The notes under the pieces: generated by a model
Seen by the model: only the letters and a program-made list of their open reading frames with translations
Told to the model about the DNA's origin: nothing
The model's database searches: none
Part shown: piece by piece, positions 7,307 through 18,735 of the stretch
Layout: the number at the start of each line of letters is the position of its first letter
How positions within the stretch are numbered: the first letter of the stretch is position 1
Program-made: the position numbers and the translations under genes
Virus record (IMG/VR): IMGVR_UViG_3300032236_002285
Coordinates: 310,001-374,000 of that record
Reading direction: 5' to 3' (one strand)
DNA length: 64,000 bases

Positions 7307-7474
7307 CCTTTTAATTTTTTTCTTTCTTTTCTCATTGTTTAAAGCATCTTTTCCAGAGACTCTTAACTCTTTCCAATTGCTACCATCAAATACATAAGTT
7401 TTACTTTTATTAATATCATAGTAAACTTCACCGGTTGATGGACTATGAGATTCCCAAGTATTTTGAGCTATCAT
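7295..7474 (-). CDS. Small hypothetical protein (59 aa) with C-terminal tag variant (KRKKKIKRLFK)
   Basis: Not in ORF track. My translation is MIAQNTWESHSPSTGEVYYD...FDGSNWKEL...; the ATG overlaps the dnaJ stop. Confidence 0.65.
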   Translation of the reverse strand: MIAQNTWESHSPSTGEVYYDINKSKTYVFDGSNWKELRVSGKDALNNEKRKKKIKRLFK

Positions 7475-8523
7475 ACTTCAAAATTTTTAGATTTTTTTAA
7501 CTTTTCAAGAACTAATTTTTCGTCAAGTTCAATCTTCTTAGGTATTTTTACTGATATCTTGATATATAAATCACCTAAGCCATATTGTATATCAGGAATA
7601 CCCTTACCACTAATTCTAATAACTTTACCATGTTCTGTTCCTGGCTCAATAGCCACTGCCATTTCACCATGAGGTGTTTTAACTTTAACATTTGAGCCAA
7701 TAATAGCATCTATCACAGAAATAGTTTTTTCTACAATAATATTATTATTCTCTCTCTTAAATGATAAGTCTCTTTCCTCTTCAACGATAATATGTAAATC
7801 ACCTGGTTGACCATTTCTAATGTAATTACCAAAACCTGTCATATTCATTTGCATTCCATTTGAAACACCCATTGGTATTTCAACTTCTACGGTTTGATCT
7901 TTAACAATAGTACCATCACCTTTACAATCATTACATTTTGTATGAACAACTTGACCACTACCCGCACAATCTGGACAAGTTGTTGCTTGTCTTATTTGAC
8001 CAAATGGTGTATTCTGAACTACGGTTCTTTGACCACTACCATTACAAGGAATACAATTTCTAACATCTGTACCACCCTTACCATCACAAGATGTACATTT
8101 GTCTTGTCTTTTATATTTTAATTTTTTTGTGGTGCCTTTTAATATCTCATCGATTGTTAACGTGACTTTAATTCTTAAATTAGAGCCTCTACTTTGTGGT
8201 CTTTGTCCACCATATCTTTGATTGAAAGCGTTGCCAAATATATCACCAAAGTTGCTAAAAATATCTTCCATTCCACCAAAACCACCATTATATGATGAAC
8301 CGGGACCAGATGCTGATCCAAATCTATCATAATTAGATTTTTTATCTGGTGTTGATAGAACATCATAAGCTTCAGCAGCTTCTTTGAACTTAGCTTCCGA
8401 CTCAACATCTCCATCATTTTTATCTGGGTGATATTTCATAGCCATCTTACGATAAGCTTTCTTAATTTCATCCGGTGTAGCATCCTTTTCAACACCTAAT
8501 ATGTTGTAGTAATCTTTACTCAT
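7471..8523 (-). CDS. dnaJ: DnaJ chaperone
   Basis: J-domain with HPD, G/F-rich region, four CxxCxGxG repeats, C-terminal domain. Confidence 0.97.
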   Translation of the reverse strand: MSKDYYNILGVEKDATPDEIKKAYRKMAMKYHPDKNDGDVESEAKFKEAAEAYDVLSTPDKKSNYDRFGSASGPGSSYNGGFGGMEDIFSNFGDIFGNAFNQRYGGQRPQSRGSNLRIKVTLTIDEILKGTTKKLKYKRQDKCTSCDGKGGTDVRNCIPCNGSGQRTVVQNTPFGQIRQATTCPDCAGSGQVVHTKCNDCKGDGTIVKDQTVEVEIPMGVSNGMQMNMTGFGNYIRNGQPGDLHIIVEEERDLSFKRENNNIIVEKTISVIDAIIGSNVKVKTPHGEMAVAIEPGTEHGKVIRISGKGIPDIQYGLGDLYIKISVKIPKKIELDEKLVLEKLKKSKNFEV

Positions 8524-8836
8524 ATGTTAATATTTGTCTTATTTTTGAATCTCTATATATTTGTACGGGTGTTTCGGTCAGTTTTATAGTCACCCATCTA
8601 TTGTAATTTATTCTAAACTCATTTTTATAAATTTGAGCTGACATAATTGGAAGTTCTTCTATAATTTCTTTGAAGATAGTATTAGCTTCTTCTAACTTCC
8701 AATCTTTCATCTCAGTTAGCCTTTTACAGAAATAATCCATACAAGGTGAAGCCGTATCTATAACATTCCCTAAATACTTATCTCCTTTGAATCCATCTGG
8801 TGCTGATTCGGATATTTCAACATACCAATCTATCAT
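8516..8836 (-). CDS. Hypothetical protein with C-terminal tag (RDSKIRQIL)
   Basis: ORF track; in the grpE-dnaJ operon. Confidence 0.7.
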   Translation of the reverse strand: MIDWYVEISESAPDGFKGDKYLGNVIDTASPCMDYFCKRLTEMKDWKLEEANTIFKEIIEELPIMSAQIYKNEFRINYNRWVTIKLTETPVQIYRDSKIRQILTYE

Positions 8837-9432
8837 AACAACTCATCTTTATTTTCTTCAAATATTTGGTTTATATTTTCTTCTCTTTTCCATTGTTTCA
8901 ACAAACTATCAATTGCTTGATCGTAGTCATTAATATCTCTAACTCTTTGAACTAAACCAGCTACATAATTATCAACTATTAAAGTCAATGTTTCTACCGT
9001 TCTGTCAATATGTTCGAAGTGTTCTAAGCAATTTTTTGACTTGATAAACATATCAATTAGATAATCAATAAACTCATCTACATTAAAATACATAGTAAAT
9101 AACTTGTATCTTTTATTTTCTGGTAGAACTCTACCATAGTTAGAATCTTTGAAAAGAGTTGGTGGATCAATAAAGACCTTACCAAAAACTCTTCTAATAG
9201 CAGGTAGAACCAAATCCAAAGTTTCATCTTCTTCTAAATATAAGGCGCCTTTGAATTCTTCTCTATCAAATAAGTGATATTTTTTATCAATAACATATTC
9301 TAATAAAGACTTAAATGAGTTAAGATATTTACTATCTATACCCTGACAAAGTGCGTCAATTATAGTTTTTTTGTAAACTACATCTTTATAAAGATCTAAG
9401 AAACTTTTTTTATTCTCTACCTTTTTAGACAT
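8833..9432 (-). CDS. Hypothetical protein with near-C-terminal tag (REENINQIF)
   Basis: ORF track; in the grpE-dnaJ operon. Confidence 0.7.
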   Translation of the reverse strand: MSKKVENKKSFLDLYKDVVYKKTIIDALCQGIDSKYLNSFKSLLEYVIDKKYHLFDREEFKGALYLEEDETLDLVLPAIRRVFGKVFIDPPTLFKDSNYGRVLPENKRYKLFTMYFNVDEFIDYLIDMFIKSKNCLEHFEHIDRTVETLTLIVDNYVAGLVQRVRDINDYDQAIDSLLKQWKREENINQIFEENKDELL

Positions 9433-9869
9433 TATTGACCAAGAACAATTTTTGGATGTCTAAATGGTTTACCATTTAACATATAACCCTTAGTAACAAC
9501 ATCTATAACTTCTGTTTTACCAGTAGGAACTACACTAATAACTTCGTGTAACTCATCATCATAAGTTTCAGTTTGAATAGTTTCAATACCTTGAGACTTT
9601 AAAAAGTTTTCAAGTTTTTGAGCAATCAGTTGAATACCTTGTTTAGCTGATTCATCTTTAATGTTTTTAATAGCAATTGCTACATCATTATCCATATCAA
9701 GAATAGGAGTAACCATTCCAACTTTAGTATTGAATTTAATTTCTTCTTTTTCTTTTTGAACTCTTCTTTTGTAGTTTTCAAATTCAGCATAAAGACGAAC
9801 ATACTTATCTTCAGCCTCTGCCAACTTTTCAACTAATGTTTGTTCATTTTCAATTTGATTTTCTTGCAT
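9432..9869 (-). CDS. grpE: GrpE nucleotide exchange factor
   Basis: YVRLYAEFENYKRR, LHEVIS, KGYMLNGKPFRHPKIV. Confidence 0.93.
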   Translation of the reverse strand: MQENQIENEQTLVEKLAEAEDKYVRLYAEFENYKRRVQKEKEEIKFNTKVGMVTPILDMDNDVAIAIKNIKDESAKQGIQLIAQKLENFLKSQGIETIQTETYDDELHEVISVVPTGKTEVIDVVTKGYMLNGKPFRHPKIVLGQ

Positions 9870-9873
9870 AGTA

Positions 9874-10359
9874 TTAATAGTTAAATTTTAATAGTTTTCT
9901 TACATTGTTTGAGTTATAAAATTCATAAGTTACATTTTTATCTACAATCTTATGTATTTCTAATTTTTCAACCTCAATTTTCATTAATTCAACATAATCA
10001 ACCAATTCTTTAAGACATCTTGTCCAAACAGAATTTGGTTCCCAATAATCAGGAAATTTATCAACGAATTTATCAATAGCAATATCAAATGTTTTCTTTC
10101 TAACAAGTAAGTAATCTTTTTCTTTAATGGATTTATTTGTTAAGAACTCCATTATATAAGTATTGAATTTATGAATAAGATTATCTGTTTCAATAATTTT
10201 CAATAAACCTATTACCAAAGCATCTCTTTCAGAGAGTTCCATTTCTTTGTTTTCTTTTAGTAATTTCTCTGCTTCTTTCTCTGAACCAACTATGTAATAA
10301 ACATAATGATCCCACAAACACATTCTTACAATATCTTCTGGATAGATTTTAATAGTCAT
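9874..10359 (-). CDS. Hypothetical protein
   Basis: ORF track; first gene of the operon containing grpE and dnaJ. Confidence 0.7.
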   Translation of the reverse strand: MTIKIYPEDIVRMCLWDHYVYYIVGSEKEAEKLLKENKEMELSERDALVIGLLKIIETDNLIHKFNTYIMEFLTNKSIKEKDYLLVRKKTFDIAIDKFVDKFPDYWEPNSVWTRCLKELVDYVELMKIEVEKLEIHKIVDKNVTYEFYNSNNVRKLLKFNY

Positions 10360-10378
10360 TTTAAAATAGTATTTTTTT

Positions 10379-10406
10379 ATTATAGTTTAAGTAACATACA
10401 AAGTTT
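10379..10406 (-). promoter_or_regulatory. Putative second promoter class AAACTTT-N15-TATAAT
   Basis: Same bipartite motif at 32922-32948 (-) and 45210-45236 (+); variant at 48719-48746. Confidence 0.5.
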
Positions 10407-10570
10407 TTTTAAATTAAAATTAACTATGTACTCAATAAACTCCATAGTTTTAGAAAAACTTTTAAAAAAGTTGAAAATTATTTAAAAAAACAAGAAAACT
10501 TGTATAAATAATTGAATATATAATTTCACTTTTACGATTGTAGGAGCTGAAAAAAATCAATATTTATGAA

Positions 10571-10798
10571 TTGAAAAACATTGTTAATTCAGAAGTGGAT
10601 ACACCTGATGGTAAAGCCACTCTAAAAGAAATCTATGTAACAGAATTAGGTTACATAATGGCAAAGATTTACTACCCTAAAAGAAGCGTATTTATTAATC
10701 ATCATATAGGGTCAATTAAAAATCTACTAGAATCGGAAAAGTTGAAACTAGTAACTGAATGGACAGAACATATAGTATTGAAAGAAAAGTTGATTTAA
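10571..10798 (+). CDS. Hypothetical protein (TTG start)
   Basis: ORF track; followed by the hairpin AAAAGTTGATT/AATCAACTTTT. Confidence 0.55.
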   Translation: MKNIVNSEVDTPDGKATLKEIYVTELGYIMAKIYYPKRSVFINHHIGSIKNLLESEKLKLVTEWTEHIVLKEKLI

Positions 10799-10981
10799 TA
10801 ATCAACTTTTTTTACTTTTATAAAACAATAAAGGTTTTTTAATATATAAAACCGAATTAGAAGAATAGTTCTTTTTTAAAAGAACAACTCAATTTAGTAG
10901 AAATTGAGAAAGATTAACAACAATTAGACGAGGGATCAGATTATCTGATTAATTTATTTACAAAAAATTAATTCATTTATC

Positions 10982-13789
10982 ATGAAAAAGATTAAGCTAT
11001 GCTTATTATCCTTGTTGTTAATCCTTGGATATCATCAAACTTTTGCTCAATGTGGTACATCAGATTGTTACATTAAAGGTGACTATGTTGAAGTTGGTGT
11101 TTCATCAACAGGTGCCTTTGGTGGTTGCACCGCGCCTTCTGGTTATCACAACAACGTTGGACTCAATCTTGGGTTTGTTGCTGACCCAGACAAAGATGGT
11201 TGGTTAGTAAGTGCACCGGGTAGTGCAAACTATATGGGTGACTACTTCGTTCCAGGTTCTCCTTATGAAGGCTGGGACTTACAATATAATGGTAACGTTT
11301 ATCGTTATCGAAATTGTCCATCGTTTGGAACTTGTCCAGGTTCTGCTTGTGCTAATACTGGTATTGTAACAACTGCAACAGATCAAACTACAACTTGGCA
11401 GGGAACAAACGGACCTTTATCTATCACACAAAAAACTGTTGTTAAAAAGGATAAATTGTATTTCGTTGTTTATATAGACATAGTAAATACTAGCGCCACT
11501 TTAGTTAATGGTGTTTATTACTTCAGAGGTCTTGACCCTGACAATGACCAACCTTGGTCAACATTAGCATCTTGTACTTTATGTGGATTCTCTACAGATA
11601 ACCGTGTAGTATTTCAACCAAGTTCAATTTCAAAAAACTGTCTTGTTACTGCAAATGGTCGTGGATACCCAGTTCAAGCTTACTTGGGTTTAGGAACTAA
11701 AGATTGTCGTGCTAAATCTTGTATTTTCAGTTCTTGGCCGTTCACTGGAACACCTAGCCAAGTATATACAGGTACAGGTTCTGCTGCTGCCGGTTCTGGT
11801 TGGTGGTATTCAGTTGGCTCTTATACACCTAATCAGGATATTGCGATTGGTATGGTTTTTAATTTAGGTAACTTAGCACCTGGTCAAAAAACATCATTAG
11901 CATTTACTTATATCCTAAAACAAGCTGACTTAGATTCCGCACTAAGTGAAACAGCTCCTAAGTTTGAATCTGCTGGTGCTGCTTACTCACCTTATACTAC
12001 TTTCCGTGTTTGTCCAGGTAAAACAGTTCCTTTGAAAATCTTAAACGGCGGTCAGTATAACTGGATTTGGACTCCGGGTACTTATATGACTGCTTCTGGT
12101 TCATCAACTACAATCCCAGTGGGAGGTACTATTCCTTCAATCACTGGTTCTTTAACATACCCATATGGTGCTGTTTACGGAGATTCTGCTGTAGTTACTG
12201 TTTGGGGACCAAAAACATATATCGCAACCGGTATTTCAAACTGTGATACTCAGTACTTAACTTTCTATGTTGATACTATTAGTTTTGCGGTTCCTCCATC
12301 TGTCACAACACCTATTAGATATTGTGAAGGTGATAAACCATCTATCTTGACAGCTAGTGGTGTAGCTGGTGGTATATTAAAATGGTATACAACACCAATC
12401 GGTGGTATATCAAGTCCTACGGCACCTACACCAACGACTACTTGGCCGGTTGGTAAAGTAGGTAGCTTTGATACAACAAGTTACTATGTTAGTCAGATGA
12501 ATGCTGCTGGATGTGAAACTCCAAGATCTCGTATTGATGTAATTGTTACTAAAAAGCCTACACCTCCAACTACTACAAATTTAGTATATTGTTTAGGTGA
12601 TACAACAAAATTACTAACTGCTGTTGGTTCTAATTTGAAATGGTATGATGCTTTAACAGCTGGAACTAAATATAGTACAACTCCTCTACCATCAAATTCA
12701 AAAGTTGGTATAACAAGTTATTATGTTTCTCAAAGTGTCAATGGTTGTGAAAGTGATCGTTCTAAATTAGATGTTGAGATTAGTAATGTTGTTGCTAGTT
12801 TTACAAAATCAAAGGATTCACTTTGTGGTGATGAATTACTTACCTTAATTAATAATTCTACAAGTAGTTCACCTGGAAGTTATGTTTCTCTGTGGACTTT
12901 AGGTGATGGTGTGAAAAGCACGGATAGTAATGTTAATCATAGTTACCTGGATATTAGAGGTACATATACTATTAAATTACTTGTTAAAAATGTTAATGGT
13001 TGTGTAGATAGTACATCACAAATAGTAAATGTATTTAAGAAACCTATATTAACATTATCTGCTAGTGATTCAATGATTTGTCAAGGTGAGGCAGTTGATT
13101 TTATAGGAACAGCCACTCCTGGTTATAGTTCATTGACTTGGGACTTTGGTGATGGTGATCCAGCTTATAACACTTTAAAAGTACGTCACGCTTTCACTAA
13201 ATCAGGATTCTTTAACATTATACTAAATGGTACTTATCCTGCTTGTCCTGGTGTTGGTTCGGGTGTTAATGTTAATGTGATTGAAGTACCTCATGTAAAT
13301 ATTGGTAGAGATACGGTAATATGTCCTGGTAATTTGGCACTTGAGTTAAAAAATCTAAATACATCAATATTACCATATTCATATATGTGGAATACAGGTG
13401 ATACAACACCAACAATATTAGTTCGTGCGGACGGTGAATATTCGTTGAGAGTTAGTTATTGGAAATGTTCAGCATCTGATAATATTACTATTAGTAAAGG
13501 TTGTTACTTAGATATACCAAATGCTTTTACACCGGGTTCTGGTAGTGATTATACAAATTATTTTATACCAAGAGATTTATTATCTAAATCAATTTTAACT
13601 TTTAGAATGAAGATATTTGATCGTTGGGGTCAATTAATATTTGAGAGTGATAAAGTAAATGGTAGAGGATGGGATGGTACATATAAAGGACAATATATGC
13701 CTTATGGTGTTTATGTTTATGTTATAAACGTATCATTTACAAATGGTGTTAGTGAGAATTATAGTGGTAACGTTACTCTTATAAGATAA
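10982..13789 (+). CDS. Secreted adhesin-like protein with PKD/Ig-like domains and a T9SS type-B (gliding motility-associated) C-terminal domain
   Basis: Sec signal peptide; Ig-like KWYT...YYVSQ repeats; PKD motifs (WTLGDG, WDFGDG); CTD IPNAFTP...KIFDRWGQLIF...GWDGTYKG...GVYVY...GNVTLIR. Confidence 0.9.
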   Translation: MKKIKLCLLSLLLILGYHQTFAQCGTSDCYIKGDYVEVGVSSTGAFGGCTAPSGYHNNVGLNLGFVADPDKDGWLVSAPGSANYMGDYFVPGSPYEGWDLQYNGNVYRYRNCPSFGTCPGSACANTGIVTTATDQTTTWQGTNGPLSITQKTVVKKDKLYFVVYIDIVNTSATLVNGVYYFRGLDPDNDQPWSTLASCTLCGFSTDNRVVFQPSSISKNCLVTANGRGYPVQAYLGLGTKDCRAKSCIFSSWPFTGTPSQVYTGTGSAAAGSGWWYSVGSYTPNQDIAIGMVFNLGNLAPGQKTSLAFTYILKQADLDSALSETAPKFESAGAAYSPYTTFRVCPGKTVPLKILNGGQYNWIWTPGTYMTASGSSTTIPVGGTIPSITGSLTYPYGAVYGDSAVVTVWGPKTYIATGISNCDTQYLTFYVDTISFAVPPSVTTPIRYCEGDKPSILTASGVAGGILKWYTTPIGGISSPTAPTPTTTWPVGKVGSFDTTSYYVSQMNAAGCETPRSRIDVIVTKKPTPPTTTNLVYCLGDTTKLLTAVGSNLKWYDALTAGTKYSTTPLPSNSKVGITSYYVSQSVNGCESDRSKLDVEISNVVASFTKSKDSLCGDELLTLINNSTSSSPGSYVSLWTLGDGVKSTDSNVNHSYLDIRGTYTIKLLVKNVNGCVDSTSQIVNVFKKPILTLSASDSMICQGEAVDFIGTATPGYSSLTWDFGDGDPAYNTLKVRHAFTKSGFFNIILNGTYPACPGVGSGVNVNVIEVPHVNIGRDTVICPGNLALELKNLNTSILPYSYMWNTGDTTPTILVRADGEYSLRVSYWKCSASDNITISKGCYLDIPNAFTPGSGSDYTNYFIPRDLLSKSILTFRMKIFDRWGQLIFESDKVNGRGWDGTYKGQYMPYGVYVYVINVSFTNGVSENYSGNVTLIR

Positions 13790-13807
13790 TATCAACAATA
13801 AAGTGAA

Positions 13808-13842
13808 AGAATAGTTGGCTTAGGTCAACTTTTCTTTTTTTT
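13808..13842 (+). terminator. Intrinsic terminator
   Basis: AGTTGGC-TTAG-GTCAACT followed by a T-tract. Confidence 0.6.
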
Positions 13843-13870
13843 AAATAAAATTTTTATATATATTTGTAAA

Positions 13871-14509
13871 ATGTCTAAATACAACAGAACATATCATTTA
13901 CCTTGGTCACCTGGTTCTACCAACGATGATAGAATATCAAACGGAGTTGAAACTCTGTTAGGTGTTGATATTGTTATTACTGAAAAGTTAGACGGTGAAA
14001 ATTGTGGTATGACTAAAGATGGTGTTTATGCTAGAAGTCATGCGGCTTTTACTACATCACCTTGGTCTAGAGAAGTAAGACAGTTACACAACTTAATTAA
14101 GAACGATATAGACGAAGATGTGTTCATCTTTGGTGAGAATATGGAAGGAATACATTCTATTGAATATACGAATCTTAAATCGTATTTCTATATGTTTGGT
14201 GTGAGAGATAACAATATCTGGATTCCTTGGGAAGGTGTTGAAGAGTATTCTTACTTATTAGATATTCCAACTGTGCCTGTTTTATTTAAGGGTGTAGTGA
14301 ATACTGAAAAAGAATTGAAAGACCTTGTGAATAGTTTAGTTAGTAAACCATCACAATTAGGTGGACAAATAGAAGGTGTAGTTGTTAGAAATGCTAGTTT
14401 ATTTCATAATGACGACTTTGCTGATAATGTGATGAAGTGGGTTCGTAAGGGTCACGTTCAAACAGATGAACACTGGACTCGTAACTGGAGACGTGCTAAA
14501 ATTAATTAA
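13871..14509 (+). CDS. ATP-dependent RNA/DNA ligase family protein
   Basis: Motif I TEKLDGEN, FGEN, EGVVVR, KWVR; TATATTTG at 13859-13866. Confidence 0.8.
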   Translation: MSKYNRTYHLPWSPGSTNDDRISNGVETLLGVDIVITEKLDGENCGMTKDGVYARSHAAFTTSPWSREVRQLHNLIKNDIDEDVFIFGENMEGIHSIEYTNLKSYFYMFGVRDNNIWIPWEGVEEYSYLLDIPTVPVLFKGVVNTEKELKDLVNSLVSKPSQLGGQIEGVVVRNASLFHNDDFADNVMKWVRKGHVQTDEHWTRNWRRAKIN

Positions 14510-14535
14510 AAAAGACCCAATTGGGTCTTTTTTTA
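14508..14535. terminator. Bidirectional intrinsic terminator
   Basis: AAAAAGACCC-AATT-GGGTCTTTTTT. Confidence 0.85.
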
Positions 14536-15699
14536 TTTTACTTTCTTGAATACAACTAAAATTTGTTTTAATTTTATTTCAGTTACTTTATTTCTTTCTT
14601 TCATATCATCCGCTCTTTCAGGATATCTTTCTAAGTCAACATTAAGTGACCAAGATTTAGTACAATTATCTAAATCAGATAAAAGAGTTTCTATATCAGA
14701 ACCAGTTAAAACCAACTTATCATTGGAAGCATAATTCATACTTAACTTTTCAACATTAAGAGTTTTATAATATCTATTCCAAAGAGGTTTATCAGTATCA
14801 TCATCATATCTGTTTGAGTATTCTTTAGCTGCTGGAATTATTTCAGTTCCAAATCTACCGGCACTACCATTATAGAATAAAGGTCCTTCAACTCTATAAT
14901 TTATTACATAATTAAAATTAAGTTTTTCACTTTTCAAATAATCTTTAATTCTTTCTGAGACATCAGTTAGTAAGGAATTGACATCACTTGAATATAAAAG
15001 ATTTCTACTTTCACCAACTCTTATATCTAAACTAAGATAATTTTGCTCTTTACTGAAATAAGGTTTCACATCAACTGGTAATTCATCTTCCATTTCTAAA
15101 CAGATATCATCTACATATTGTTCAACCTCTTTTACTTTTTCTAATTCATCATATCTTGCTGCGATTAGAATCATTGGAAAGTTAGCAGGATCTTTTAGTT
15201 TATCTGGATACAACTTACCTTTAGAGTTCTTAGACATAATAAAATCATCTTCTGGATAAATATCAGAATCACTCAATCTATAACCTTTATAAGTATCACC
15301 TTTAGATATTTCATCTTTAGAAATAAAAATAACATCTCTGCCAATTTTACCGTGTTCTCCACCACCAGTTGATTTATAATCTTTAGCTAAGTAAAGATTC
15401 CAATCTCTTAAAAACATTGCCCATTTTAAAGAGTTAGGTGGTAATTTATCTATAGTTACTTTTTCTAATTCATGTTTCATTATTTGTGTATCACCTGTGT
15501 AGAATGGTGAATCTTTAAGACCTTTAGTAGCTCTTTTTAATTCACTCCATTTAATATTCAACATTGGATAGATACCAAGAAGTTTTTTACCAAGAAATCC
15601 TAAAAGAGCATTTGGTATAAACATAAGAGATCTTTTCTCAGAAGGACTTAGTTCTTCGTTTACTTTATTGAAATTGTTATATGATTGTAAGTGTTTCAT
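14533..15699 (-). CDS. Hypothetical protein with CTS-like N-terminus (MKHLQSYNNFNKVNEE)
   Basis: ORF track; late operon. Confidence 0.75.
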   Translation of the reverse strand: MKHLQSYNNFNKVNEELSPSEKRSLMFIPNALLGFLGKKLLGIYPMLNIKWSELKRATKGLKDSPFYTGDTQIMKHELEKVTIDKLPPNSLKWAMFLRDWNLYLAKDYKSTGGGEHGKIGRDVIFISKDEISKGDTYKGYRLSDSDIYPEDDFIMSKNSKGKLYPDKLKDPANFPMILIAARYDELEKVKEVEQYVDDICLEMEDELPVDVKPYFSKEQNYLSLDIRVGESRNLLYSSDVNSLLTDVSERIKDYLKSEKLNFNYVINYRVEGPLFYNGSAGRFGTEIIPAAKEYSNRYDDDTDKPLWNRYYKTLNVEKLSMNYASNDKLVLTGSDIETLLSDLDNCTKSWSLNVDLERYPERADDMKERNKVTEIKLKQILVVFKKVK

Positions 15700-15703
15700 T
15701 ATA

Positions 15704-16168
15704 TTAATCTATTTTTCTGAATGCAAATGTAACAGAGTCAACCATTTGATTATCTGGTAAAGCATCTACTGAATTATAATATAAATACTTAGGAATTCTC
15801 ATAGTAAAAATATATTCTATTTCAAGACCTAATTCACCCTTAGCATATGATTCAGCAAATTTTAAATCTTCTTTAATATCAGATAAATTAAACTCTTTTA
15901 ATGTAGGTCCAAAAAATCTTGTATTGTCTTGAGCCAAAACTCTTTTTTCAATCTTAACATCTACTGTTTTTATAGATTGAGAAGTGCCTGGTTCTTCTTG
16001 CATATAATGAATATCAATTACATTTGATTTAGAAAAATCTAATTTTAGTGTATTTGATTCTTTAACACTAACTTTAAATCCTTGGTCTTTTAGTTCTTGA
16101 AATATATCCAAGAATATACTAAAATCCTGAGATTCAAATATTTTATATGATTTCAGGTGTTTCATCAA
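15704..16168 (-). CDS. Hypothetical protein with CTS-like N-terminus (MKHLKSYKIFES)
   Basis: ORF track; late operon. Confidence 0.75.
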   Translation of the reverse strand: MMKHLKSYKIFESQDFSIFLDIFQELKDQGFKVSVKESNTLKLDFSKSNVIDIHYMQEEPGTSQSIKTVDVKIEKRVLAQDNTRFFGPTLKEFNLSDIKEDLKFAESYAKGELGLEIEYIFTMRIPKYLYYNSVDALPDNQMVDSVTFAFRKID

Positions 16169-16748
16169 AGTCTTTAAATCTTTTTATCTTAAAAATAGAA
16201 CTGATATTTTTAAGTTTGCCTTTTATCTCATTTAACATTAATCTTTGAATTCTGTTTAATCTTCTGTGTTTTTCCAAAGCATCAACAATTTTTGATGTTT
16301 CCTCAAAGTATTTATTTCTAAATTTTTCAGAAGCGGTAAAAGCATCTGATATGTTTTGTAATCTATCTGCTAGTTTTATAGTTAAAGCACCTTCACTCAT
16401 ATTAACCATTTTAGACATTAAGTATTCGGCTTTTCCACCATATTTTTCAATTTCATCTTTGTTGGATGTTAATTCAACTACAATATCAGCAACTCTTTTA
16501 CCAAATTTACTTTTAATTAATTCATATCCTTCTTCAAAATTATCAAAACAATCTTCTATTGTATCATGTAAAAGACTAGCACAAAGCAAATCTTCTTCTG
16601 TTGTATATTGTTTTACAATACCGTTTACTTTTTGAACGTGTGCTTCAAAATAAGGCTTACCTATGAACTTTCTTATTTGTCCACTATGTAATTCTTCAGC
16701 TAATGTCCAAGCTTCTCTTTCTTTTTGTGTTAATGGTCTATTTGGCAT
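16143..16748 (-). CDS. HD-domain (p)ppGpp hydrolase-like protein (Mesh1/small alarmone hydrolase family)
   Basis: LHSGQIRK..GKPYFEAH, LLHDTIED, IKLADRLQN; TAATATATA at 16753-16761. Confidence 0.8.
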   Translation of the reverse strand: MPNRPLTQKEREAWTLAEELHSGQIRKFIGKPYFEAHVQKVNGIVKQYTTEEDLLCASLLHDTIEDCFDNFEEGYELIKSKFGKRVADIVVELTSNKDEIEKYGGKAEYLMSKMVNMSEGALTIKLADRLQNISDAFTASEKFRNKYFEETSKIVDALEKHRRLNRIQRLMLNEIKGKLKNISSIFKIKRFKDFDETPEII

Positions 16749-16881
16749 ATTGTATATATTAAATAAATTTTGTATTTTTGTAGTATTATAAAATAAATTA
16801 GTTTTATAATCGTCTATTTACAAGATAGTATAAAAAATTCAATTATACAAATTATTATTGACTTATTTTAATATATAAATT

Positions 16882-18225
16882 ATGAAGCTATTTAGATATA
16901 AAGAATTTTTAAGAGAATCATTGGAGTCAAAAAACTACAATATTCCCACATATGAACAAGCACTTGAACTTTGCTCAGGTGAAGAATCCCCATTTTATGA
17001 ATCTAAGATGGTTGTTGATGGGTTTAATGTATCTGTATTTAACTACCGTCTTGCTCAATATAAAGACTTTGCTAATCCTATTCCAGAAAAACCAGAGTTG
17101 AAAGGCTACGAAATGAGAGGTTTGACTTTTGTTTTTAATGAAGATGGTTCTTTATTCAATAGATATGTACTACTTGAAAAGTTCTTTAACTTAAATCAAG
17201 TACCAGAATCTTTATATTCAGTTGTTAAGAACTATAAAATTAAATTTGTGAATAACAAAGAAGATGGTTCTATTGCTTCATTTATTAAACTACCAAACGG
17301 TAAAATCGTTGGTAAATCTAAAATGGGGTTTGATAATGACCAAGCTGAAGGTATTAATCGTATTTATAAAACTAATAATCAAATCAAAAGTCTTGTTAAA
17401 TGGGCTTTAGATAATGATATTGTGCCTATATTTGAATATGTAGCACCAAACAACCGTATTGTATTAAGATACCCAGGTGAAGAATTAATCTTATTGAGAT
17501 TAAGAGATAATAAAACAGGTAAACATATTGATATTAGAGATCACTTAGATAAGGTTGGTGATATTAGAATTGCGCCATTTGAAGATGAAGTAAAAGACTT
17601 GGATCAATTAATTGAGTTGACAGCTACTCAAGTAGATAAAGAAGGTTCAATTGTTACTTGCGAAGATGAAATGGGTAGAGACTTTTTCTTTAAGTTAAAG
17701 ACTCCTTGGTATTGTGAACGTCATGGTTTACTTACTGAAGATCTTTATAGAGAGCATGTTATTATTGGTTATATCTTAGATGATAAGATAGACGATATCT
17801 TAGGTCAAGTACCAGAAGATGAAAAAGAAGCACATGAAAGAATTAATAAGATTATTTCTATTGTTAAGAAAACCATATCTGACAAAGTGTCAGAAATTGA
17901 AAAAGCTTACGAACAATTTGTCAAGTCTGGTATGACTAAAAAAGAATATGCTCTAAAGCATAGAGTTGGTAACCCAAACTTTGCCTTTGTGATGAATATG
18001 GTTAAGGCTGATGATTTAAGGAAGATGTCTAAGGAAGAAATCCTTGACATTTATGATATTATGGAAGACTATGAAAAATCATTACAAAGATGTGAACCAT
18101 ATGAAATGGCTAAAGAATGGTTAAGAGATATGACTAAGAGATTACACATTGCTAGAGAATGGTTACAAACAAAAGATAAAACTTTGTTTTTCCAAGATCC
18201 AGAAGAAAATGATGATGATAACTAA
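16882..18225 (+). CDS. T4 Rnl1-like RNA ligase with CTS-like N-terminus
   Basis: RGLTF, LEKFFNLNQ, KEDGS (motif I), FEYVAPNNRIV, EG, KLKT; starts MKLFRYKEFLRES; TAATATATA at 16869-16877. Confidence 0.85.
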   Translation: MKLFRYKEFLRESLESKNYNIPTYEQALELCSGEESPFYESKMVVDGFNVSVFNYRLAQYKDFANPIPEKPELKGYEMRGLTFVFNEDGSLFNRYVLLEKFFNLNQVPESLYSVVKNYKIKFVNNKEDGSIASFIKLPNGKIVGKSKMGFDNDQAEGINRIYKTNNQIKSLVKWALDNDIVPIFEYVAPNNRIVLRYPGEELILLRLRDNKTGKHIDIRDHLDKVGDIRIAPFEDEVKDLDQLIELTATQVDKEGSIVTCEDEMGRDFFFKLKTPWYCERHGLLTEDLYREHVIIGYILDDKIDDILGQVPEDEKEAHERINKIISIVKKTISDKVSEIEKAYEQFVKSGMTKKEYALKHRVGNPNFAFVMNMVKADDLRKMSKEEILDIYDIMEDYEKSLQRCEPYEMAKEWLRDMTKRLHIAREWLQTKDKTLFFQDPEENDDDN

Positions 18226-18470
18226 TGAGAATTTTAAAATTTAATGAATTGAAAGTAAACGATCCAAAACACAGATGTAAAATATGTGGTGAGCCTCTAT
18301 ATAGAACAGATGGTGGTGGTCACTCAGTTATATTACAATGTTCTTCAGATGCTGCTAAATTTTGGAACTTTGAAAGAGGTTCTAAAGATCAAAGTATTTC
18401 ACATAAACATTTTATGGATTCTACAATGAGTATACCAGTTGAAGAATGGAATGAATTAGAAAAGATATGA
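18225..18470 (+). CDS. Small Cys-containing protein (possible zinc ribbon)
   Basis: CKIC...C; N-terminus MRILKFNE. Confidence 0.6.
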   Translation: MRILKFNELKVNDPKHRCKICGEPLYRTDGGGHSVILQCSSDAAKFWNFERGSKDQSISHKHFMDSTMSIPVEEWNELEKI

Positions 18471-18619
18471 AACTAAAGAAATTTAAAGATTTTAAGAAAA
18501 GAAAAAAGACCGTAATTAAAAAAATTACGGATGCGCCATATGATTGGAGACCTACATTCGATCAAAATAGTCCTGCTCCAGGATATCAAATTAATATAGT
18601 ACAAACTAAACTTTCTTAA
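18467..18619 (+). CDS. Small basic hypothetical protein (50 aa)
   Basis: Not in ORF track. MKLKKFKDFKKRKK...; ATGA overlap with the upstream stop. Confidence 0.55.
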   Translation: MKLKKFKDFKKRKKTVIKKITDAPYDWRPTFDQNSPAPGYQINIVQTKLS

Positions 18620-18690
18620 ACTTATACCATACAAGTAATACAAGAAAATTAACAAAGAAAATTTCTGAATTTTTATCAGATTAAAAAACT

Positions 18691-18707
18691 TTGGCACGAT
18701 TTTTGAT
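18691..18707 (+). promoter_or_regulatory. Sigma-54-like -24/-12 element upstream of dnaK
   Basis: TTGGCACGATTTTTGAT versus consensus YTGGCACGRNNNTTGCW (one mismatch). Confidence 0.45.
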
Positions 18708-18735
18708 TTATCATTAATAAAAATAAAAATAAAGT

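What the first reader, a model, noticed from the sequence alone, without database searches (positions are those of the whole stretch)
10982..13789. Phage gene for a T9SS type-B cargo adhesin, apparently late-expressed
Seen in sequence: Sec signal peptide, Ig-like and PKD repeats, and an intact gliding-motility-associated CTD ending in GNVTLIR. A TAATATATA site lies at 10840-10848, followed by an approximately 130-nt leader with several short hairpins (e.g. CTCAATTT/AAATTGAG, ATCAGA/TCTGAT). Known: type-B CTD proteins such as SprB are exported by the Bacteroidota T9SS, usually with a PorP/SprF-family partner, and displayed on the cell surface. Inference: the phage uses the host T9SS to remodel the infected-cell surface. 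Possible purposes are masking receptors (superinfection exclusion), altering gliding or adhesion, or jamming the T9SS. This also supports the host assignment.
Basis: partly seen in the sequence, partly recalled or inferred. Interest (0 to 1): 0.7.

Follow-up and report, generated by a model that had tools for sequence, protein, structure and literature searches.

The report
Megaphage carries host-derived T9SS adhesin cassette
A roughly 480 kb freshwater phage carries, as a removable 3 kb cassette under a phage-type promoter, a surface-adhesin gene copied from its likely Chitinophagaceae host; the protein is built for export by the host's type IX secretion system, so the phage probably changes what the infected cell shows on its surface.

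Summary
Window 10982-13789 (+) encodes a 935-aa protein with a signal peptide, an unannotated galactose-mutarotase-like beta-supersandwich head, Ig-like, 2x Ig_7 and 2x PKD domains, and a type-B T9SS CTD (TIGR04131 45.8 bits, cut-off 35).

It lies in the middle of a 476 kb T4-core megaphage record and is not a chimera. An independent 44.5 kb contig from another study carries it in the same phage synteny.

New findings:
- The gene is host-derived. The two phage copies form one clade nested in a chromosomal Chitinophagaceae family (81% identity to the nearest bacterial ortholog).
- It is a discrete 3,025-bp cassette of promoter, 133-nt leader, ORF and terminator. A near-identical phage variant lacks exactly this cassette.
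- It is under purifying selection in phages (dN/dS 0.11).
- TAATATATA is a real phage-specific promoter class. It drives portal, neck and tail-fibre genes, whereas replication genes use host-type Bacteroidota promoters.
- The phage has no PorP/SprF, while candidate hosts have 7-8 each. The phage CTD is predicted to dock in a host orphan shuttle (score 0.73, best control 0.00).
- The phage encodes four more T9SS cargo genes.

What the phage gains from it is untested. It is a new variant of a known kind: phage-encoded type-A T9SS cargo was reported in 2020.

The parts
10787..10815 (+). Terminator-like hairpin plus T-run of the upstream 75-aa gene. The left edge of the cassette lies at 10810/10811, inside the T-run.
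   Evidence: Sequence AAGTTGATT-TAAT-AATCAACTT followed by TTTTT. Between this phage and L009 the stem shows a compensatory change (GATT/AATC to GGTT/AACC). The empty-site joint starts at 10810.
10811..13835 (+). 3,025-bp presence/absence cassette: promoter, leader, adhesin ORF and terminator.
   Evidence: In run X4 a 2,630-nt contig joins 10810 directly to 13836 with no letters between. It has 6 differences in 1,211 nt upstream and 51 in 358 nt downstream. Cassette gene GC is 0.36 against 0.30 for the genome. The non-coding parts are unique in the genome.
10840..10848 (+). Phage-specific promoter core TAATATATA (extended form tTTTAATATATAa).
   Evidence: There are 143 copies in the genome, 123 of them in the 7.9% non-coding fraction. 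126 are oriented toward a start within 300 nt. The motif precedes the portal, gp13-like neck and tail-fibre genes.
10849..10981 (+). 133-nt leader with three short hairpins (10868-10885, 10888-10908, 10934-10950). Its length is an outlier for this promoter class.
   Evidence: RNA fold -21 kcal/mol, z = -2.0. No Rfam hit. Only 11 of 126 exact-motif genes have a gap of 60 nt or more. About 8-9 differences from L009, and the stems of hairpins 2 and 3 are intact. It contains no host-type TAnnTTTG element.
10982..13789 (+). Adhesin ORF, 935 aa plus stop codon.
   Evidence: dN/dS 0.108 against the second phage copy.
10982..11047 (+). Signal peptide (residues 1-22). Predicted cleavage is TFA|Q, which would leave an N-terminal Gln.
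   Evidence: Sequence inspection. It is identical in the two phage copies but only 43% identical to the bacterial ortholog.
11048..11956 (+). Head domain (residues 23-325): a galactose-mutarotase-like beta-supersandwich, probably glycan-binding, with no catalytic domain attached.
   Evidence: AF2 model pLDDT 84.8, pTM 0.86. VIA Z 17-18 to the N-domains of GH94, GH15 and GH116 enzymes, 15.8 to a mutarotase, 14.3 to YidC P1. It is the part most conserved between phage and bacterium (89.9% aa, omega 0.05) and is mosaic between the phage alleles.
11957..12286 (+). Ig-like beta-sandwich (residues 326-435) that Pfam does not recognise.
   Evidence: All-beta segment of the model with pLDDT around 90.
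12287..12811 (+). Two Ig_7 (CHU_C-associated Ig-like) domains, residues 436-610.
   Evidence: PF19081, E 1.1e-16, 2 stretches.
12812..13381 (+). PKD region with two PKD domains, residues 611-800.
   Evidence: PF18911 E 8.1e-19 and PF00801 E 2.5e-11.
13511..13786 (+). Type-B T9SS C-terminal sorting domain, residues 844-935.
   Evidence: TIGR04131 45.8 bits (cut-off 35) and PF13585. Predicted to dock in a host orphan PorP-like barrel: ipSAE 0.73, best of 3 controls 0.00.
13813..13840 (+). Intrinsic terminator of the cassette (AGTTGGC-TTAG-GTCAACT followed by TTTCTTTTTTTT). The right cassette edge lies at 13835/13836, inside its T-run.
   Evidence: Terminator scan, sequence, joint. It shares the AGTTG...CAACTTTT skeleton with the left hairpin.
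13854..13862 (+). Variant promoter TTATATATA of the downstream Rnl2-like RNA ligase gene (ATG at 13871). It lies outside the cassette.
   Evidence: PHROG RNA ligase match for 13871-14506.

Best explanation
The gene is a host-derived accessory gene of a megaphage. It resembles a moron, or an auxiliary gene of the psbA type.

Origin (shown): a chromosomal gene of a Chitinophagaceae lineage was captured once. In that lineage it belongs to a family of surface proteins built from a glycan-binding-type head, an Ig/PKD stalk and a type-B T9SS sorting domain. In the phage it now sits as a self-contained unit between the terminator of one phage gene and the promoter of the next. The unit has a phage-class promoter (TAATATATA), an unusually long leader, the ORF and its own terminator. 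It has been kept under purifying selection in at least two phage lineages.

How it works (inferred): after the host-promoter-driven early phase, the phage's own promoter class switches it on together with virion genes. A phage sigma factor expressed from a host-type promoter probably reads that class. The pre-protein is exported by Sec, passes through the host T9SS translocon, and is handed to a host 'orphan' PorP/SprF-like shuttle. This would be the same shuttle that serves the host's own orthologs, because the CTDs are 78% identical and neither the phage copy nor the bacterial copies have an adjacent shuttle gene. The protein stays on the infected cell's surface. The head is the part best conserved with the host protein, so it most likely binds the same ligand.

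Benefit (conjecture): the infected cell keeps or increases display of this adhesin, for example attachment to particles, polysaccharide or kin cells, while host gene expression declines. Because it competes for the same shuttle, it may also displace the host's own allele.
For: Identity and domains.

Phage location:
- Uniform 0.28-0.33 GC across 476 kb.
- T4-type capsid, portal, PolB and RNR genes, a sub-cut-off sheath match, and phage neighbours.
- The same synteny in an independent 44.5 kb contig from another study.

Host origin:
- The 81%, 69% and 62% homologs lie in bacterial chromosomal contexts.
- Tree: the phage pair (support 100) is sister to bacterial P0002 (100) and nested in the family.
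- Gene GC is 0.36 against 0.30 for the genome.

Cassette: the empty-site contig, the terminators and the promoter.

Selection: dN/dS 0.108 at dS 0.18.

Promoter classes:
-.
- Phage sigma-70-family gene at genome 209428-210216 (Sigma70_r2, 61.8 bits) with a TAnnTTTG element 56 nt upstream.

Export route:
- No PorP/SprF in the phage.
- 7-8 PorP/SprF genes over the cut-off in each of two candidate-host genomes.
- G001 has four shuttles paired with an upstream cargo gene and three orphans.
- Predicted CTD-shuttle complex: score 0.73, best of 3 controls 0.00. That mark was reached by 51 of 78 solved complexes and 2 of 108 mismatched pairs. Runs agree in at least 89% of contacts; partner pLDDT at least 78.

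Literature:
- Type-B cargo is anchored by PorP-like proteins (PMC9143113).
- Orphan type-B cargo share one orphan shuttle, and CTDs above about 44-50% identity can share shuttles (PMC12618676).

Head conservation: 89.9% aa, omega 0.05 against the bacterial ortholog.
Against: - There are no expression data. None of the listed runs that hold the sequence is on record as RNA, so timing rests on promoter-class logic alone, and that class also precedes RNR, DnaJ, the HD hydrolase and the RNA ligases.
- The host is uncultured and known only by inference from the donor lineage.
- In F. johnsoniae, over-produced type-B CTD fusions are not secreted unless the shuttle is co-produced (PMC12618676). A phage that brings no shuttle may therefore get limited export.
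- A close relative lacks the cassette, so it is dispensable.
- The complex prediction shows family likeness. It does not show which shuttle binds, or that binding occurs.
- The head's ligand is unknown. Fold similarity to carbohydrate-binding accessory domains does not prove glycan binding.
- The adaptive benefit is not addressed by any result here.
Confidence: 0.6

Rival explanations
1. Superinfection exclusion or receptor replacement. The phage copy takes the host shuttle and the surface sites of the host's own adhesin, which would be a phage receptor. Further phages then cannot adsorb to the infected cell, or progeny are not wasted on it.
For: T9SS-secreted motility adhesins SprB and RemA are thought to act as phage receptors in F. 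johnsoniae, and T9SS mutations give broad phage resistance in Flavobacterium (PMC9804748). The shuttle is limiting for type-B cargo (PMC12618676). The head region is mosaic between the phage alleles, with dS 0.43 against about 0.08 elsewhere. The phage also encodes a CTD-only mini-protein and other cargo. Bellas et al. suggested the same for Cryophage (PMC7468147).
Against: Nothing shows that this family is a receptor for this or any phage. The head is the domain most conserved with the host protein (omega 0.05), which is not what one expects of a non-recognisable replacement. The mosaic has constant omega of about 0.1, which points to recombination rather than diversifying selection.
Confidence: 0.2
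2. A recently captured host fragment with no function for the phage, carried along until it is lost.
For: Presence/absence polymorphism among close relatives. Raised GC. The locus is an indel hot spot, since L009 carries two further insertions.
Against: dN/dS 0.108 over dS 0.18 between two phage lineages, with an intact 935-codon frame in both. The gene has acquired a phage-class promoter and a terminator and has lost the bacterial upstream partner gene. Synonymous divergence from the nearest bacterial gene is saturated (dS about 1.3), so the transfer is not very recent.
Confidence: 0.1
3. Jamming or retargeting of the T9SS. Mass production of orphan type-B cargo, together with the 111-aa CTD-only protein, saturates host shuttles or the translocon and shuts down host secretion or gliding.
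For: Five T9SS cargo genes and no shuttle gene in the phage. One of them is a bare signal peptide plus CTD behind a phage promoter variant. The shuttle is limiting (PMC12618676).
Against: A 935-aa protein with a conserved, selected head and stalk (omega about 0.1 in every domain) is far more than a plug needs. The different CTDs in the phage are only 26-40% identical, so by the published pairing rules they probably use different shuttles.
Confidence: 0.05
4. Assembly chimera or host flank of a provirus: the gene is bacterial DNA wrongly joined to phage DNA.
For: IMG/VR labels the record 'provirus'. The closest full-length homologs are bacterial.
Against: The gene lies about 320 kb into a 476 kb record of uniform GC. 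The original contig is 481,145 bp, so only about 4.9 kb was trimmed. Phage genes flank it directly on both sides. One source-run (X1) contig spans the laid stretch (window 9600-14700), both junctions included, with 0 differences, and an independent contig from another study has the same junctions at about 95% identity. The promoter upstream is the phage's own class.
Confidence: 0.01

Closest known systems
Cryophage variable genes with T9SS type-A CTDs (Bellas et al. 2020, Nat Commun, PMC7468147)
   Same: Phage-encoded proteins carry a T9SS sorting domain. The genes are flexible (present, absent or variant) among near-identical phage genomes. The proposed role is hijack of the host T9SS to change what the infected cell secretes or displays.
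   Different: Those carry type-A CTDs (PorV route, A-LPS anchoring or release) on enzymes or PA14 proteins. Here the CTD is type-B, which depends on a PorP/SprF shuttle and is anchored non-covalently. The protein is an adhesin-type head and stalk with no enzyme domain. In addition, a bacterial donor clade, the cassette boundaries, the promoter class and purifying selection are shown here.
Orphan type-B CTD substrates of Flavobacterium johnsoniae (Fjoh_1123, Fjoh_1720, Fjoh_4934) served by the orphan shuttle Fjoh_1677; SprB-SprF (PMC12618676, PMC9143113)
   Same: Signal peptide plus a C-terminal TIGR04131-type domain. No adjacent porP/sprF gene. Predicted docking of the CTD in a PorP-like barrel.
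   Different: The gene is encoded by a phage. It is not homologous to SprB outside the CTD and is far smaller (SprB is about 6,500 aa, from my own knowledge). There is no evidence of a role in gliding. The five motifs A-E could not be checked because they are given only in a figure.
Chromosomal orthologs in Chitinophagaceae (P0002 on JGI contig Ga0492706_0000064; Rurimicrobium arvi P0021 and P0058)
   Same: Full-length collinear homologs (81%, 62% and 48% identity) with the same domain order. They too have no adjacent shuttle gene.
   Different: The bacterial copies follow a conserved 138-139-aa secreted-protein gene and sit in housekeeping neighbourhoods. The phage copy lacks that partner and has a phage promoter, a long leader and lower GC.
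Phage morons (for example lambda bor and lom, and the HK97-group morons; own knowledge)
   Same: An independent transcription unit with its own promoter and terminator, inserted between two phage genes, atypical in composition, and absent from close relatives.
   Different: Classic morons are expressed from the repressed prophage through host-type promoters. Here the promoter belongs to the phage's own post-early class, and lysogeny is not shown.
Host-derived auxiliary genes of lytic phages, for example cyanophage psbA (own knowledge)
   Same: A host gene captured by a phage, kept under purifying selection, recombining with other alleles, and expressed during infection to sustain a host function.
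   Different: The function here is cell-surface display and adhesion rather than metabolism, and it depends on a host secretion machine.

Membership tests
T9SS type-B CTD cargo (TIGR04131 / PF13585) | A C-terminal domain that matches the type-B sorting-domain model above the curated cut-off and lies at the very C-terminus. | tested here: met
   TIGR04131 45.8 bits against cut-off 35; residues 844-935 cover model positions 2-85 of 85. PF13585 E 1.4e-11.
T9SS type-B CTD cargo (TIGR04131 / PF13585) | An N-terminal Sec signal peptide. | tested here: met
   MKKIK, then an 11-residue hydrophobic core, then TFA|Q. This is by inspection only; no signal-peptide predictor was available.
T9SS type-B CTD cargo (TIGR04131 / PF13585) | A cognate porP/sprF-like shuttle gene directly downstream (common, but not universal). 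| tested here: not met
   There is no TIGR03519 match anywhere in the phage at E <= 1. The bacterial orthologs also lack one. Orphan substrates are documented (PMC12618676).
T9SS type-B CTD cargo (TIGR04131 / PF13585) | PorP/SprF-like shuttles are available in the producing cell, and the CTD is able to engage one. | tested here: inconclusive
   Two candidate-host genomes each have 7-8 PorP-family genes over the cut-off. Three of them are orphans in G001. Predicted complex: 0.73 against best control 0.00, a mark reached by 51 of 78 solved complexes and 2 of 108 mismatched pairs. This is a prediction and the true host is unknown.
T9SS type-B CTD cargo (TIGR04131 / PF13585) | The five conserved CTD motifs A-E required for secretion (PMC12618676). 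| not tested
   The motif residues are given only in a figure that is not held.
T9SS type-B CTD cargo (TIGR04131 / PF13585) | Secretion and surface display that depend on the T9SS. | not testable with these tools
   This needs expression in a wild-type strain and a T9SS mutant.
SprB-type gliding motility adhesin | Homology to SprB beyond the CTD, a giant repetitive protein, and an sprB-sprF-type operon arrangement. | tested here: not met
   The protein is 935 aa with a head, Ig_7 and PKD architecture. There is no shuttle gene. The homolog list contains only PKD, Ig_7 and CHU_C proteins. It works like a type-B surface protein but is not an SprB family member.
Phage moron / accessory cassette | Its own promoter and terminator between two phage genes, absence from close relatives, and foreign composition or origin. 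| tested here: met
   Promoter, terminator, empty site in run X4, GC 0.36 against 0.30, bacterial donor clade.
Phage moron / accessory cassette | Expression from a prophage through a host-type promoter (lysogenic conversion). | tested here: not met
   There is no TAnnTTTG host-type element in the upstream region, only the phage-class motif. Lysogeny is not shown.
Phage-encoded T9SS cargo (Cryophage type, PMC7468147) | A T9SS sorting domain on a gene of a phage genome, with the gene variable among phage variants. | tested here: met
   The 978-aa cargo gene also appears variable. The CTD type differs (B here, A there).
T4-style late promoter class | A single AT-rich -10-like element with no -35 element, placed before virion genes and read by a phage factor. 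| tested here: inconclusive
   The motif has a fixed spacing to the ATG and no conserved upstream element. It precedes the portal, neck and tail-fibre genes, and capsid and sheath as one-mismatch variants. It also precedes non-structural genes. A phage sigma-70-family gene exists, but nothing links it to the motif.

The most novel reading that the evidence does not exclude
The megaphage runs a coordinated surface-coat programme through the host T9SS. After early genes, a phage sigma factor turns on a set of at least five phage-encoded cargo proteins: this host-derived adhesin, two roughly 980-aa type-B proteins, a bare signal-peptide-plus-CTD mini-protein and a type-A protein. These occupy the host's PorP/SprF and PorV shuttles and replace the cell's native surface coat with a phage-chosen one. 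The cargo cassettes are swapped among phage variants, and the adhesin head recombines with other alleles, possibly the host's own, as part of an arms race over adsorption and adhesion.
Probability: 0.15. Interest if true: 0.8.

Novelty: new variant of a known kind. Interest (0 to 1): 0.52.

Why it matters
Phage-encoded T9SS cargo has been reported once, as type-A CTD enzymes, and was called unique at the time (PMC7468147). I found no report of a phage-borne type-B CTD surface protein in the searchable literature.

This case adds four things:
- a traceable bacterial donor;
- exact cassette boundaries, with a natural empty-site variant;
- evidence of selection inside phages;
- a promoter logic of host-type against phage-type classes.

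In Flavobacterium, T9SS-secreted surface proteins are thought to include phage receptors, and they include adhesion and motility proteins. A phage that installs its own copy therefore gives a concrete and testable model of how a virocell's surface is reprogrammed.

The phage also brings no shuttle of its own, so it is a natural probe of shuttle specificity for orphan type-B cargo. The result also narrows the likely host of a Mahaphage-related freshwater megaphage to Rurimicrobium-like Chitinophagaceae.

Tried and rejected
- PHROGs gave no family for the adhesin.
- The IMG/VR scan found no other viral contig with a close relative.
- Deposited phages gave only weak 25-29% PKD/CTD-level hits in two megaphages.
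- Rfam on the leader found nothing: best E 0.72, to an unrelated lncRNA.
- The bacterial upstream 138-139-aa partner gene is absent from the phage (tblastn).
- The leaders of the adhesin gene and the 987-aa cargo gene share no similarity beyond shuffles.
- No second copy of the head domain exists in the phage proteome (hmmsearch).
- No run listed as holding the sequence is on record as RNA, so timing could not be measured.
- The sigma-70-type consensus promoter scan was no better than shuffles: 17 found against 15.6 expected.
- dnaK lies next to adhesin paralogs in two bacterial loci, and Hsp70 lies about 5 kb downstream in the phage. I considered co-capture and rejected it, because the megaphages LR745206 and LR756502 share the Rnl1-Hsp70 stretch at 80% nt without an adhesin gene within the 12-kb query (window 8000-20000).
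- Positive selection on the head was rejected, because dS rises together with dN (omega 0.10).
- A virion-decoration role was rejected, because a Sec signal and a T9SS CTD send the protein out of the cytoplasm where virions assemble.


Full report
**1. Observation**

Window 10982-13789 (+) is a 935-codon ORF. It begins with a typical signal peptide (MKKIKLCLLSLLLILGYHQTFA|QC...) and ends in ...GNVTLIR.

- Pfam finds two Ig_7 domains, two PKD domains and CHU_C at residues 844-932.
- NCBIfam TIGR04131, the type-B T9SS sorting domain, scores 45.8 bits against a cut-off of 35 and covers model positions 2-85 of 85 at the very C-terminus.
- TAATATATA is at 10840-10848, 133 nt before the ATG.
The fold is only marginally better than shuffles (z = -2.0; 7 of 200 shuffles fold as well), and there is no Rfam match.

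**2. What the replicon is**

The window is positions 310001-374000 of a 476,236-bp virus record (CheckV completeness 97%, labelled 'provirus'). The original contig is 481,145 bp, so only about 4.9 kb was trimmed.

- GC is 0.28-0.33 in every 10-kb bin.
- The genome has a T4-type major capsid protein (Gp23, 91.8 bits), a gp20 portal (200.6 bits), PolB and RNR, plus a sheath match below the family cut-off (21 bits, cut-off 31.4).
- Next to the adhesin gene lie DnaJ, GrpE, an Rnl2-like RNA ligase, an HD hydrolase, a T4 gp63-like RNA ligase and Hsp70.
- The stretch from Rnl1 to Hsp70 is 80% identical in nucleotides to the 634 kb and 642 kb 'uncultured phage' records LR745206 and LR756502. The huge-phage study reports complete genomes of 634, 636, 642 and 735 kb, places all its largest genomes in the Mahaphage clade, and predicts that those of more than 634 kb replicate in Bacteroidetes (PMC7162821).

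**3. It is not a chimera**

- In the likely source run, one contig covers 9600-14700 with no differences.
- In a run from a different study, a 44.5 kb contig (L009) carries the gene at about 95% nt identity between the same phage neighbours.
- Both junctions are therefore reproduced independently.

**4. It is a cassette**

In run X4 (same study as the source, different sample), a 2,630-nt contig joins window 10810 directly to 13836. It is 99.5% identical upstream (6 differences in 1,211 nt) and 86% identical downstream.

The missing 3,025 bp comprise exactly the promoter motif, the leader, the ORF and the gene's own terminator (13813-13830 plus a T-run).

- The left edge lies in the T-run of the upstream gene's terminator hairpin. 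That stem shows a compensatory pair change between the two phages.
- Both edges share the skeleton AGTTG...CAACTTTT.
- The non-coding parts are unique in the genome, so there are no transposon-like ends.
- L009 carries two further insertions at this locus, so the site is an indel hot spot.

**5. Origin**

Full-length homologs are numerous.

- The 81% (P0002), 69% (P0006) and 62% (Rurimicrobium arvi P0021) homologs lie in ordinary bacterial neighbourhoods: SNF2 helicase, asparagine synthase and photolyase for the first two, and ATP synthase, YidC and SMC for the third. Each is preceded by a conserved 138-139-aa secreted-protein gene.
- All loci with 60% identity or more, other than L009, have 37-50% GC and no phage-like flanks.
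- Named genomes are Chitinophagaceae or Chitinophagales, with a few evidently mis-binned MAG contigs.
- In a maximum-likelihood tree of 64 proteins, the two phage copies form a clade (SH-aLRT 100) that is sister to P0002 (100) and nested several nodes deep in the bacterial family.
- No other IMG/VR contig has a close relative.

This indicates one host-to-phage capture. The phage gene has 36% GC, against 30% for the genome and 40% for P0002. The bacterial upstream partner gene was not taken along.

**6. The gene is functional in phages**

- Between the two phage copies dN/dS is 0.108 (dS 0.18). Against P0002, dS is saturated at about 1.3.
- By domain, the head (residues 23-325) is the part best conserved with the bacterium (89.9% aa, omega 0.05). 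The signal peptide (43%) and the pre-CTD linker (56%) are the most changed, and the CTD is 78% identical.
- Between the two phage alleles, the head-coding part (nt about 150-1050) is only 86-91% identical, against 96-98% elsewhere. dS rises in step with dN, so omega stays near 0.10. In nt 301-600, L009 is as close to the bacterial gene (86.7%) as to the other phage (86.0%).
- I read this as recombination with another allele, not as positive selection.

**7. The unannotated N-terminus**

An AF2 model of residues 22-440, built from 35 homologs, has pLDDT 84.8 and pTM 0.86.

- Residues 23-325 form a galactose-mutarotase-like beta-supersandwich. VIA-align gives Z 17-18 over about 240 residues to the non-catalytic N-domains of GH94 phosphorylases, dextran dextrinase, GH15 and GH116. 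It gives 15.8 to a mutarotase and 14.3 to the YidC P1 domain (Foldseek agrees).
- No catalytic domain follows. An Ig-like sandwich (326-435) comes next.
- The same head occurs on other Bacteroidota T9SS cargo with either CTD type (TM 0.86-0.87). It also occurs on some Uroviricota proteins and on one uncultured Caudovirales FN3 protein (E 8.5e-24).
- The architecture is a binding head on an Ig/PKD stalk with a surface anchor, which is an adhesin or lectin layout. The ligand is unknown.

**8. Promoter class and timing**

The statistics below rest on a simple caller I wrote (ATG starts only, at least 60 aa, 603 genes, 92% coding). Exact counts depend on it.

- TAATATATA occurs 143 times, 123 of them in the 7.9% non-coding fraction.
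- 126 copies point at a start within 300 nt. The gap is bimodal: 55 at 0-9 nt, mostly 4-7 nt (the mRNA would be leaderless or nearly so), and 46 at 20-29 nt, with 9 at 10-19 nt.
- No -35-like element is conserved.
- Allowing one mismatch, 247 of 603 genes carry the motif.
- It precedes the portal, the gp13-like neck protein, a tail-fibre protein and many large orphan proteins. As TTATATATA it precedes the capsid and sheath genes.
- Among upstream regions that lack it, the enriched words spell TA(tc)TTTGTA. From my own knowledge of Bacteroidota sigma-A promoters, this is the -7 element TAnnTTTG. It often comes with a -33 TTTG.
- Genes behind those host-type promoters are two helicases, a helicase-methyltransferase fusion, an HNH endonuclease, an ATPase and a clamp-loader-like protein.
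- A phage sigma-70-family gene (genome 209428-210216; Sigma70_r2, 61.8 bits) itself has a TAnnTTTG element 56 nt upstream, without a clear -33 TTTG.

The simplest reading is a cascade: host RNAP transcribes early genes, the phage factor is made, and it activates the TAATATATA class. The adhesin has only the phage-class motif and no TAnnTTTG.

'Late-class' is therefore reasonable but unproven. The class also includes RNR, DnaJ, the HD hydrolase and both RNA ligases, and no listed holder run is on record as RNA.

The 133-nt leader is unusual for the class: only 11 of 126 genes have 60 nt or more. The other large cargo gene also has a long leader, of 105 nt. The two leaders share no similarity.

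**9. Export route**

- The phage has no PorP/SprF-family gene.
- Two candidate-host genomes, R. arvi and MAG JAZKDB01, have 7-8 each.
- In the MAG, four shuttles follow a type-B cargo gene and three are orphans.
- The literature shows that type-B cargo is held at the surface by PorP-like proteins (PMC9143113). It shows that orphan cargo share an orphan shuttle, that the shuttle is limiting when cargo is over-produced, and that CTDs above about 44-50% identity can share shuttles (PMC12618676).
- The phage CTD is 78% identical to that of its nearest bacterial ortholog. Those orthologs are orphans too, so the phage protein should use, and compete for, the same host shuttle.

A complex prediction of the phage CTD (residues 836-935) with the mature orphan shuttle of L114 passed the test:

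- score 0.73, best of 3 controls 0.00;
- the mark was reached by 51 of 78 solved complexes and 2 of 108 mismatched pairs;
- runs agree in at least 89% of contacts, and partner pLDDT is at least 78.

This supports competence to dock in a PorP-like barrel. It does not identify the true shuttle or prove binding.

**10. Context in the phage**

There are four type-B CTD matches in the genome and one type-A match.

| Genome coordinates | Protein | Notes |
|---|---|---|
| 320982-323789 (+) | 935 aa | the adhesin studied here |
| 233836-236799 (+) and 249565-252501 (-) | 987 and 978 aa | signal peptide plus CTD; 48% identical to each other; related to the adhesin only in the PKD/CTD region |
| 254936-255271 (-) | 111 aa | only a signal peptide and a type-B CTD; TTATATATA 21 nt upstream |
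| 475610-476236 (-) | 208 aa | type-A match at the record end; over the TIGR04183 cut-off (27.3 vs 23) but just under the Pfam PF18962 cut-off (25.6 vs 27) |

Sources.

The 978-aa gene also looks variable among related phages. An X2 contig skips 3,042 bp that match the gene, and X3 and X4 show no coverage of it. That joint lies between paralogous flanking genes, so I treat it as suggestive only.

**11. Comparison with what is known, and verdict**

Bellas et al. 2020 described three type-A CTD genes in 'Cryophage', called this a unique case of phage-encoded T9SS cargo, and noted that the genes vary between phage variants (PMC7468147). I found no report of phage-borne type-B cargo.

The present gene meets the sequence criteria of a type-B cargo protein. 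It is not an SprB family member. It behaves like a moron in structure but uses a phage-class promoter.

- **Shown:** identity, phage location, host origin, cassette nature and selection.
- **Inferred:** timing, the T9SS and shuttle route, and surface display.
- **Conjecture:** the benefit to the phage, whether sustained adhesion, exclusion or jamming.

It is a new variant of a known kind, of moderate interest.

Noticed in passing
whole genome; in the window for example 4058, 7072, 16753, 16869, 22029, 59333: The TAATATATA promoter class has a bimodal gap to the ATG: 4-7 nt for about 55 genes and 17-28 nt for about 50. A large share of this phage's mRNAs would therefore be leaderless or nearly so.
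   Followed up: partly
genome-wide; window about 1536, 45905, 52655, 54935, 56615 (gene starts): Canonical Bacteroidota host-type promoters (-33 TTTG, -7 TAnnTTTG) precede about 40 genes, including helicases, a methyltransferase fusion, an HNH endonuclease and an ATPase. These are probably the early class. A phage sigma-70-family gene at genome 209428-210216 has a TAnnTTTG element 56 nt upstream.
   Followed up: partly
genome 254936-255271 (-), locus L110: A 111-aa protein that is only a signal peptide plus a type-B CTD (PF13585, 53.7 bits), with TTATATATA 21 nt upstream. Similar CHU_C-only proteins of 87-172 aa exist on short metagenome contigs. It could be a shuttle or T9SS competitor, or a carrier.
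   Followed up: partly
genome 233836-236799 (+) and 249565-252501 (-), loci L108 and L109: Two further type-B CTD proteins with signal peptides (987 and 978 aa, 48% identical), whose N-terminal regions have no Pfam match. An X2 contig skips 3,042 bp that match the 978-aa gene, and X3 and X4 do not cover it. T9SS cargo genes therefore seem to be flexible genes in this phage group.
   Followed up: partly
genome 475610-476236 (-), locus L111: A 208-aa protein with a signal peptide and a type-A CTD match: over the TIGR04183 cut-off (27.3 vs 23) but just under the Pfam PF18962 cut-off (25.6 vs 27). The record ends exactly at its ATG. The original contig is 481,145 bp, so the 'provirus' trimming removed only about 4.9 kb and may be an artefact of host-like genes at the edge.
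   Followed up: partly
window 14533-15699 (-), 15704-16168 (-); genome 245888-254903: A large paralog family of proteins that start M(K/R)(H/Y)LK.YK.FE. Most sit directly behind a leaderless-type TAATATATA promoter and are clustered around the other cargo genes. They have no PHROG match.
   Followed up: no
window 7471-8523 (-), 9432-9869 (-), 18736-20619 (+): The phage encodes a full DnaJ-GrpE-Hsp70 chaperone set. Its Hsp70 is 64-66% identical to bacterial DnaK. In two bacterial loci (L011, L020) dnaK lies next to an adhesin paralog, which is probably a coincidence.
   Followed up: partly
window 9870-9872 and 13844-14012, against L009: The related phage L009 has a 910-nt insertion (a Pyr_redox gene) after GrpE, and 1,135 nt (a 310-aa gene on the opposite strand) in place of 13844-14012. 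The neighbourhood is a hot spot for gene gain and loss.
   Followed up: partly
window 10849-10981 and genome 233731-233835: ATTAGA occurs twice in each of the two long cargo-gene leaders, where about 0.1 is expected per leader. TTAGA occurs five times in the 105-nt leader. This is a post-hoc observation of unknown meaning.
   Followed up: no
protein residues 23-325 (window 11048-11956): The same head fold occurs in an uncultured Caudovirales FN3 protein (A0A6J5P167, 1,422 aa, E 8.5e-24, 22% identity) and in three Uroviricota clusters of the ESM Atlas (TM 0.71-0.75). Whether those are virion proteins or secreted cargo is unknown.
   Followed up: no
genome 254088-254896: The X4 phage variant carries an 809-bp deletion inside the 347-aa gene next to the mini-CTD gene. 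The mini-CTD gene itself is retained, with 3 differences in 499 nt.
   Followed up: no
bacterial loci L006 7539-7958 and L008 9567-9983: In the bacteria, a conserved 138-139-aa protein with a signal peptide and no Pfam match always lies directly upstream of the adhesin ortholog. The two copies are 32% identical to each other. It may be a functional partner that the phage copy does without.
   Followed up: partly
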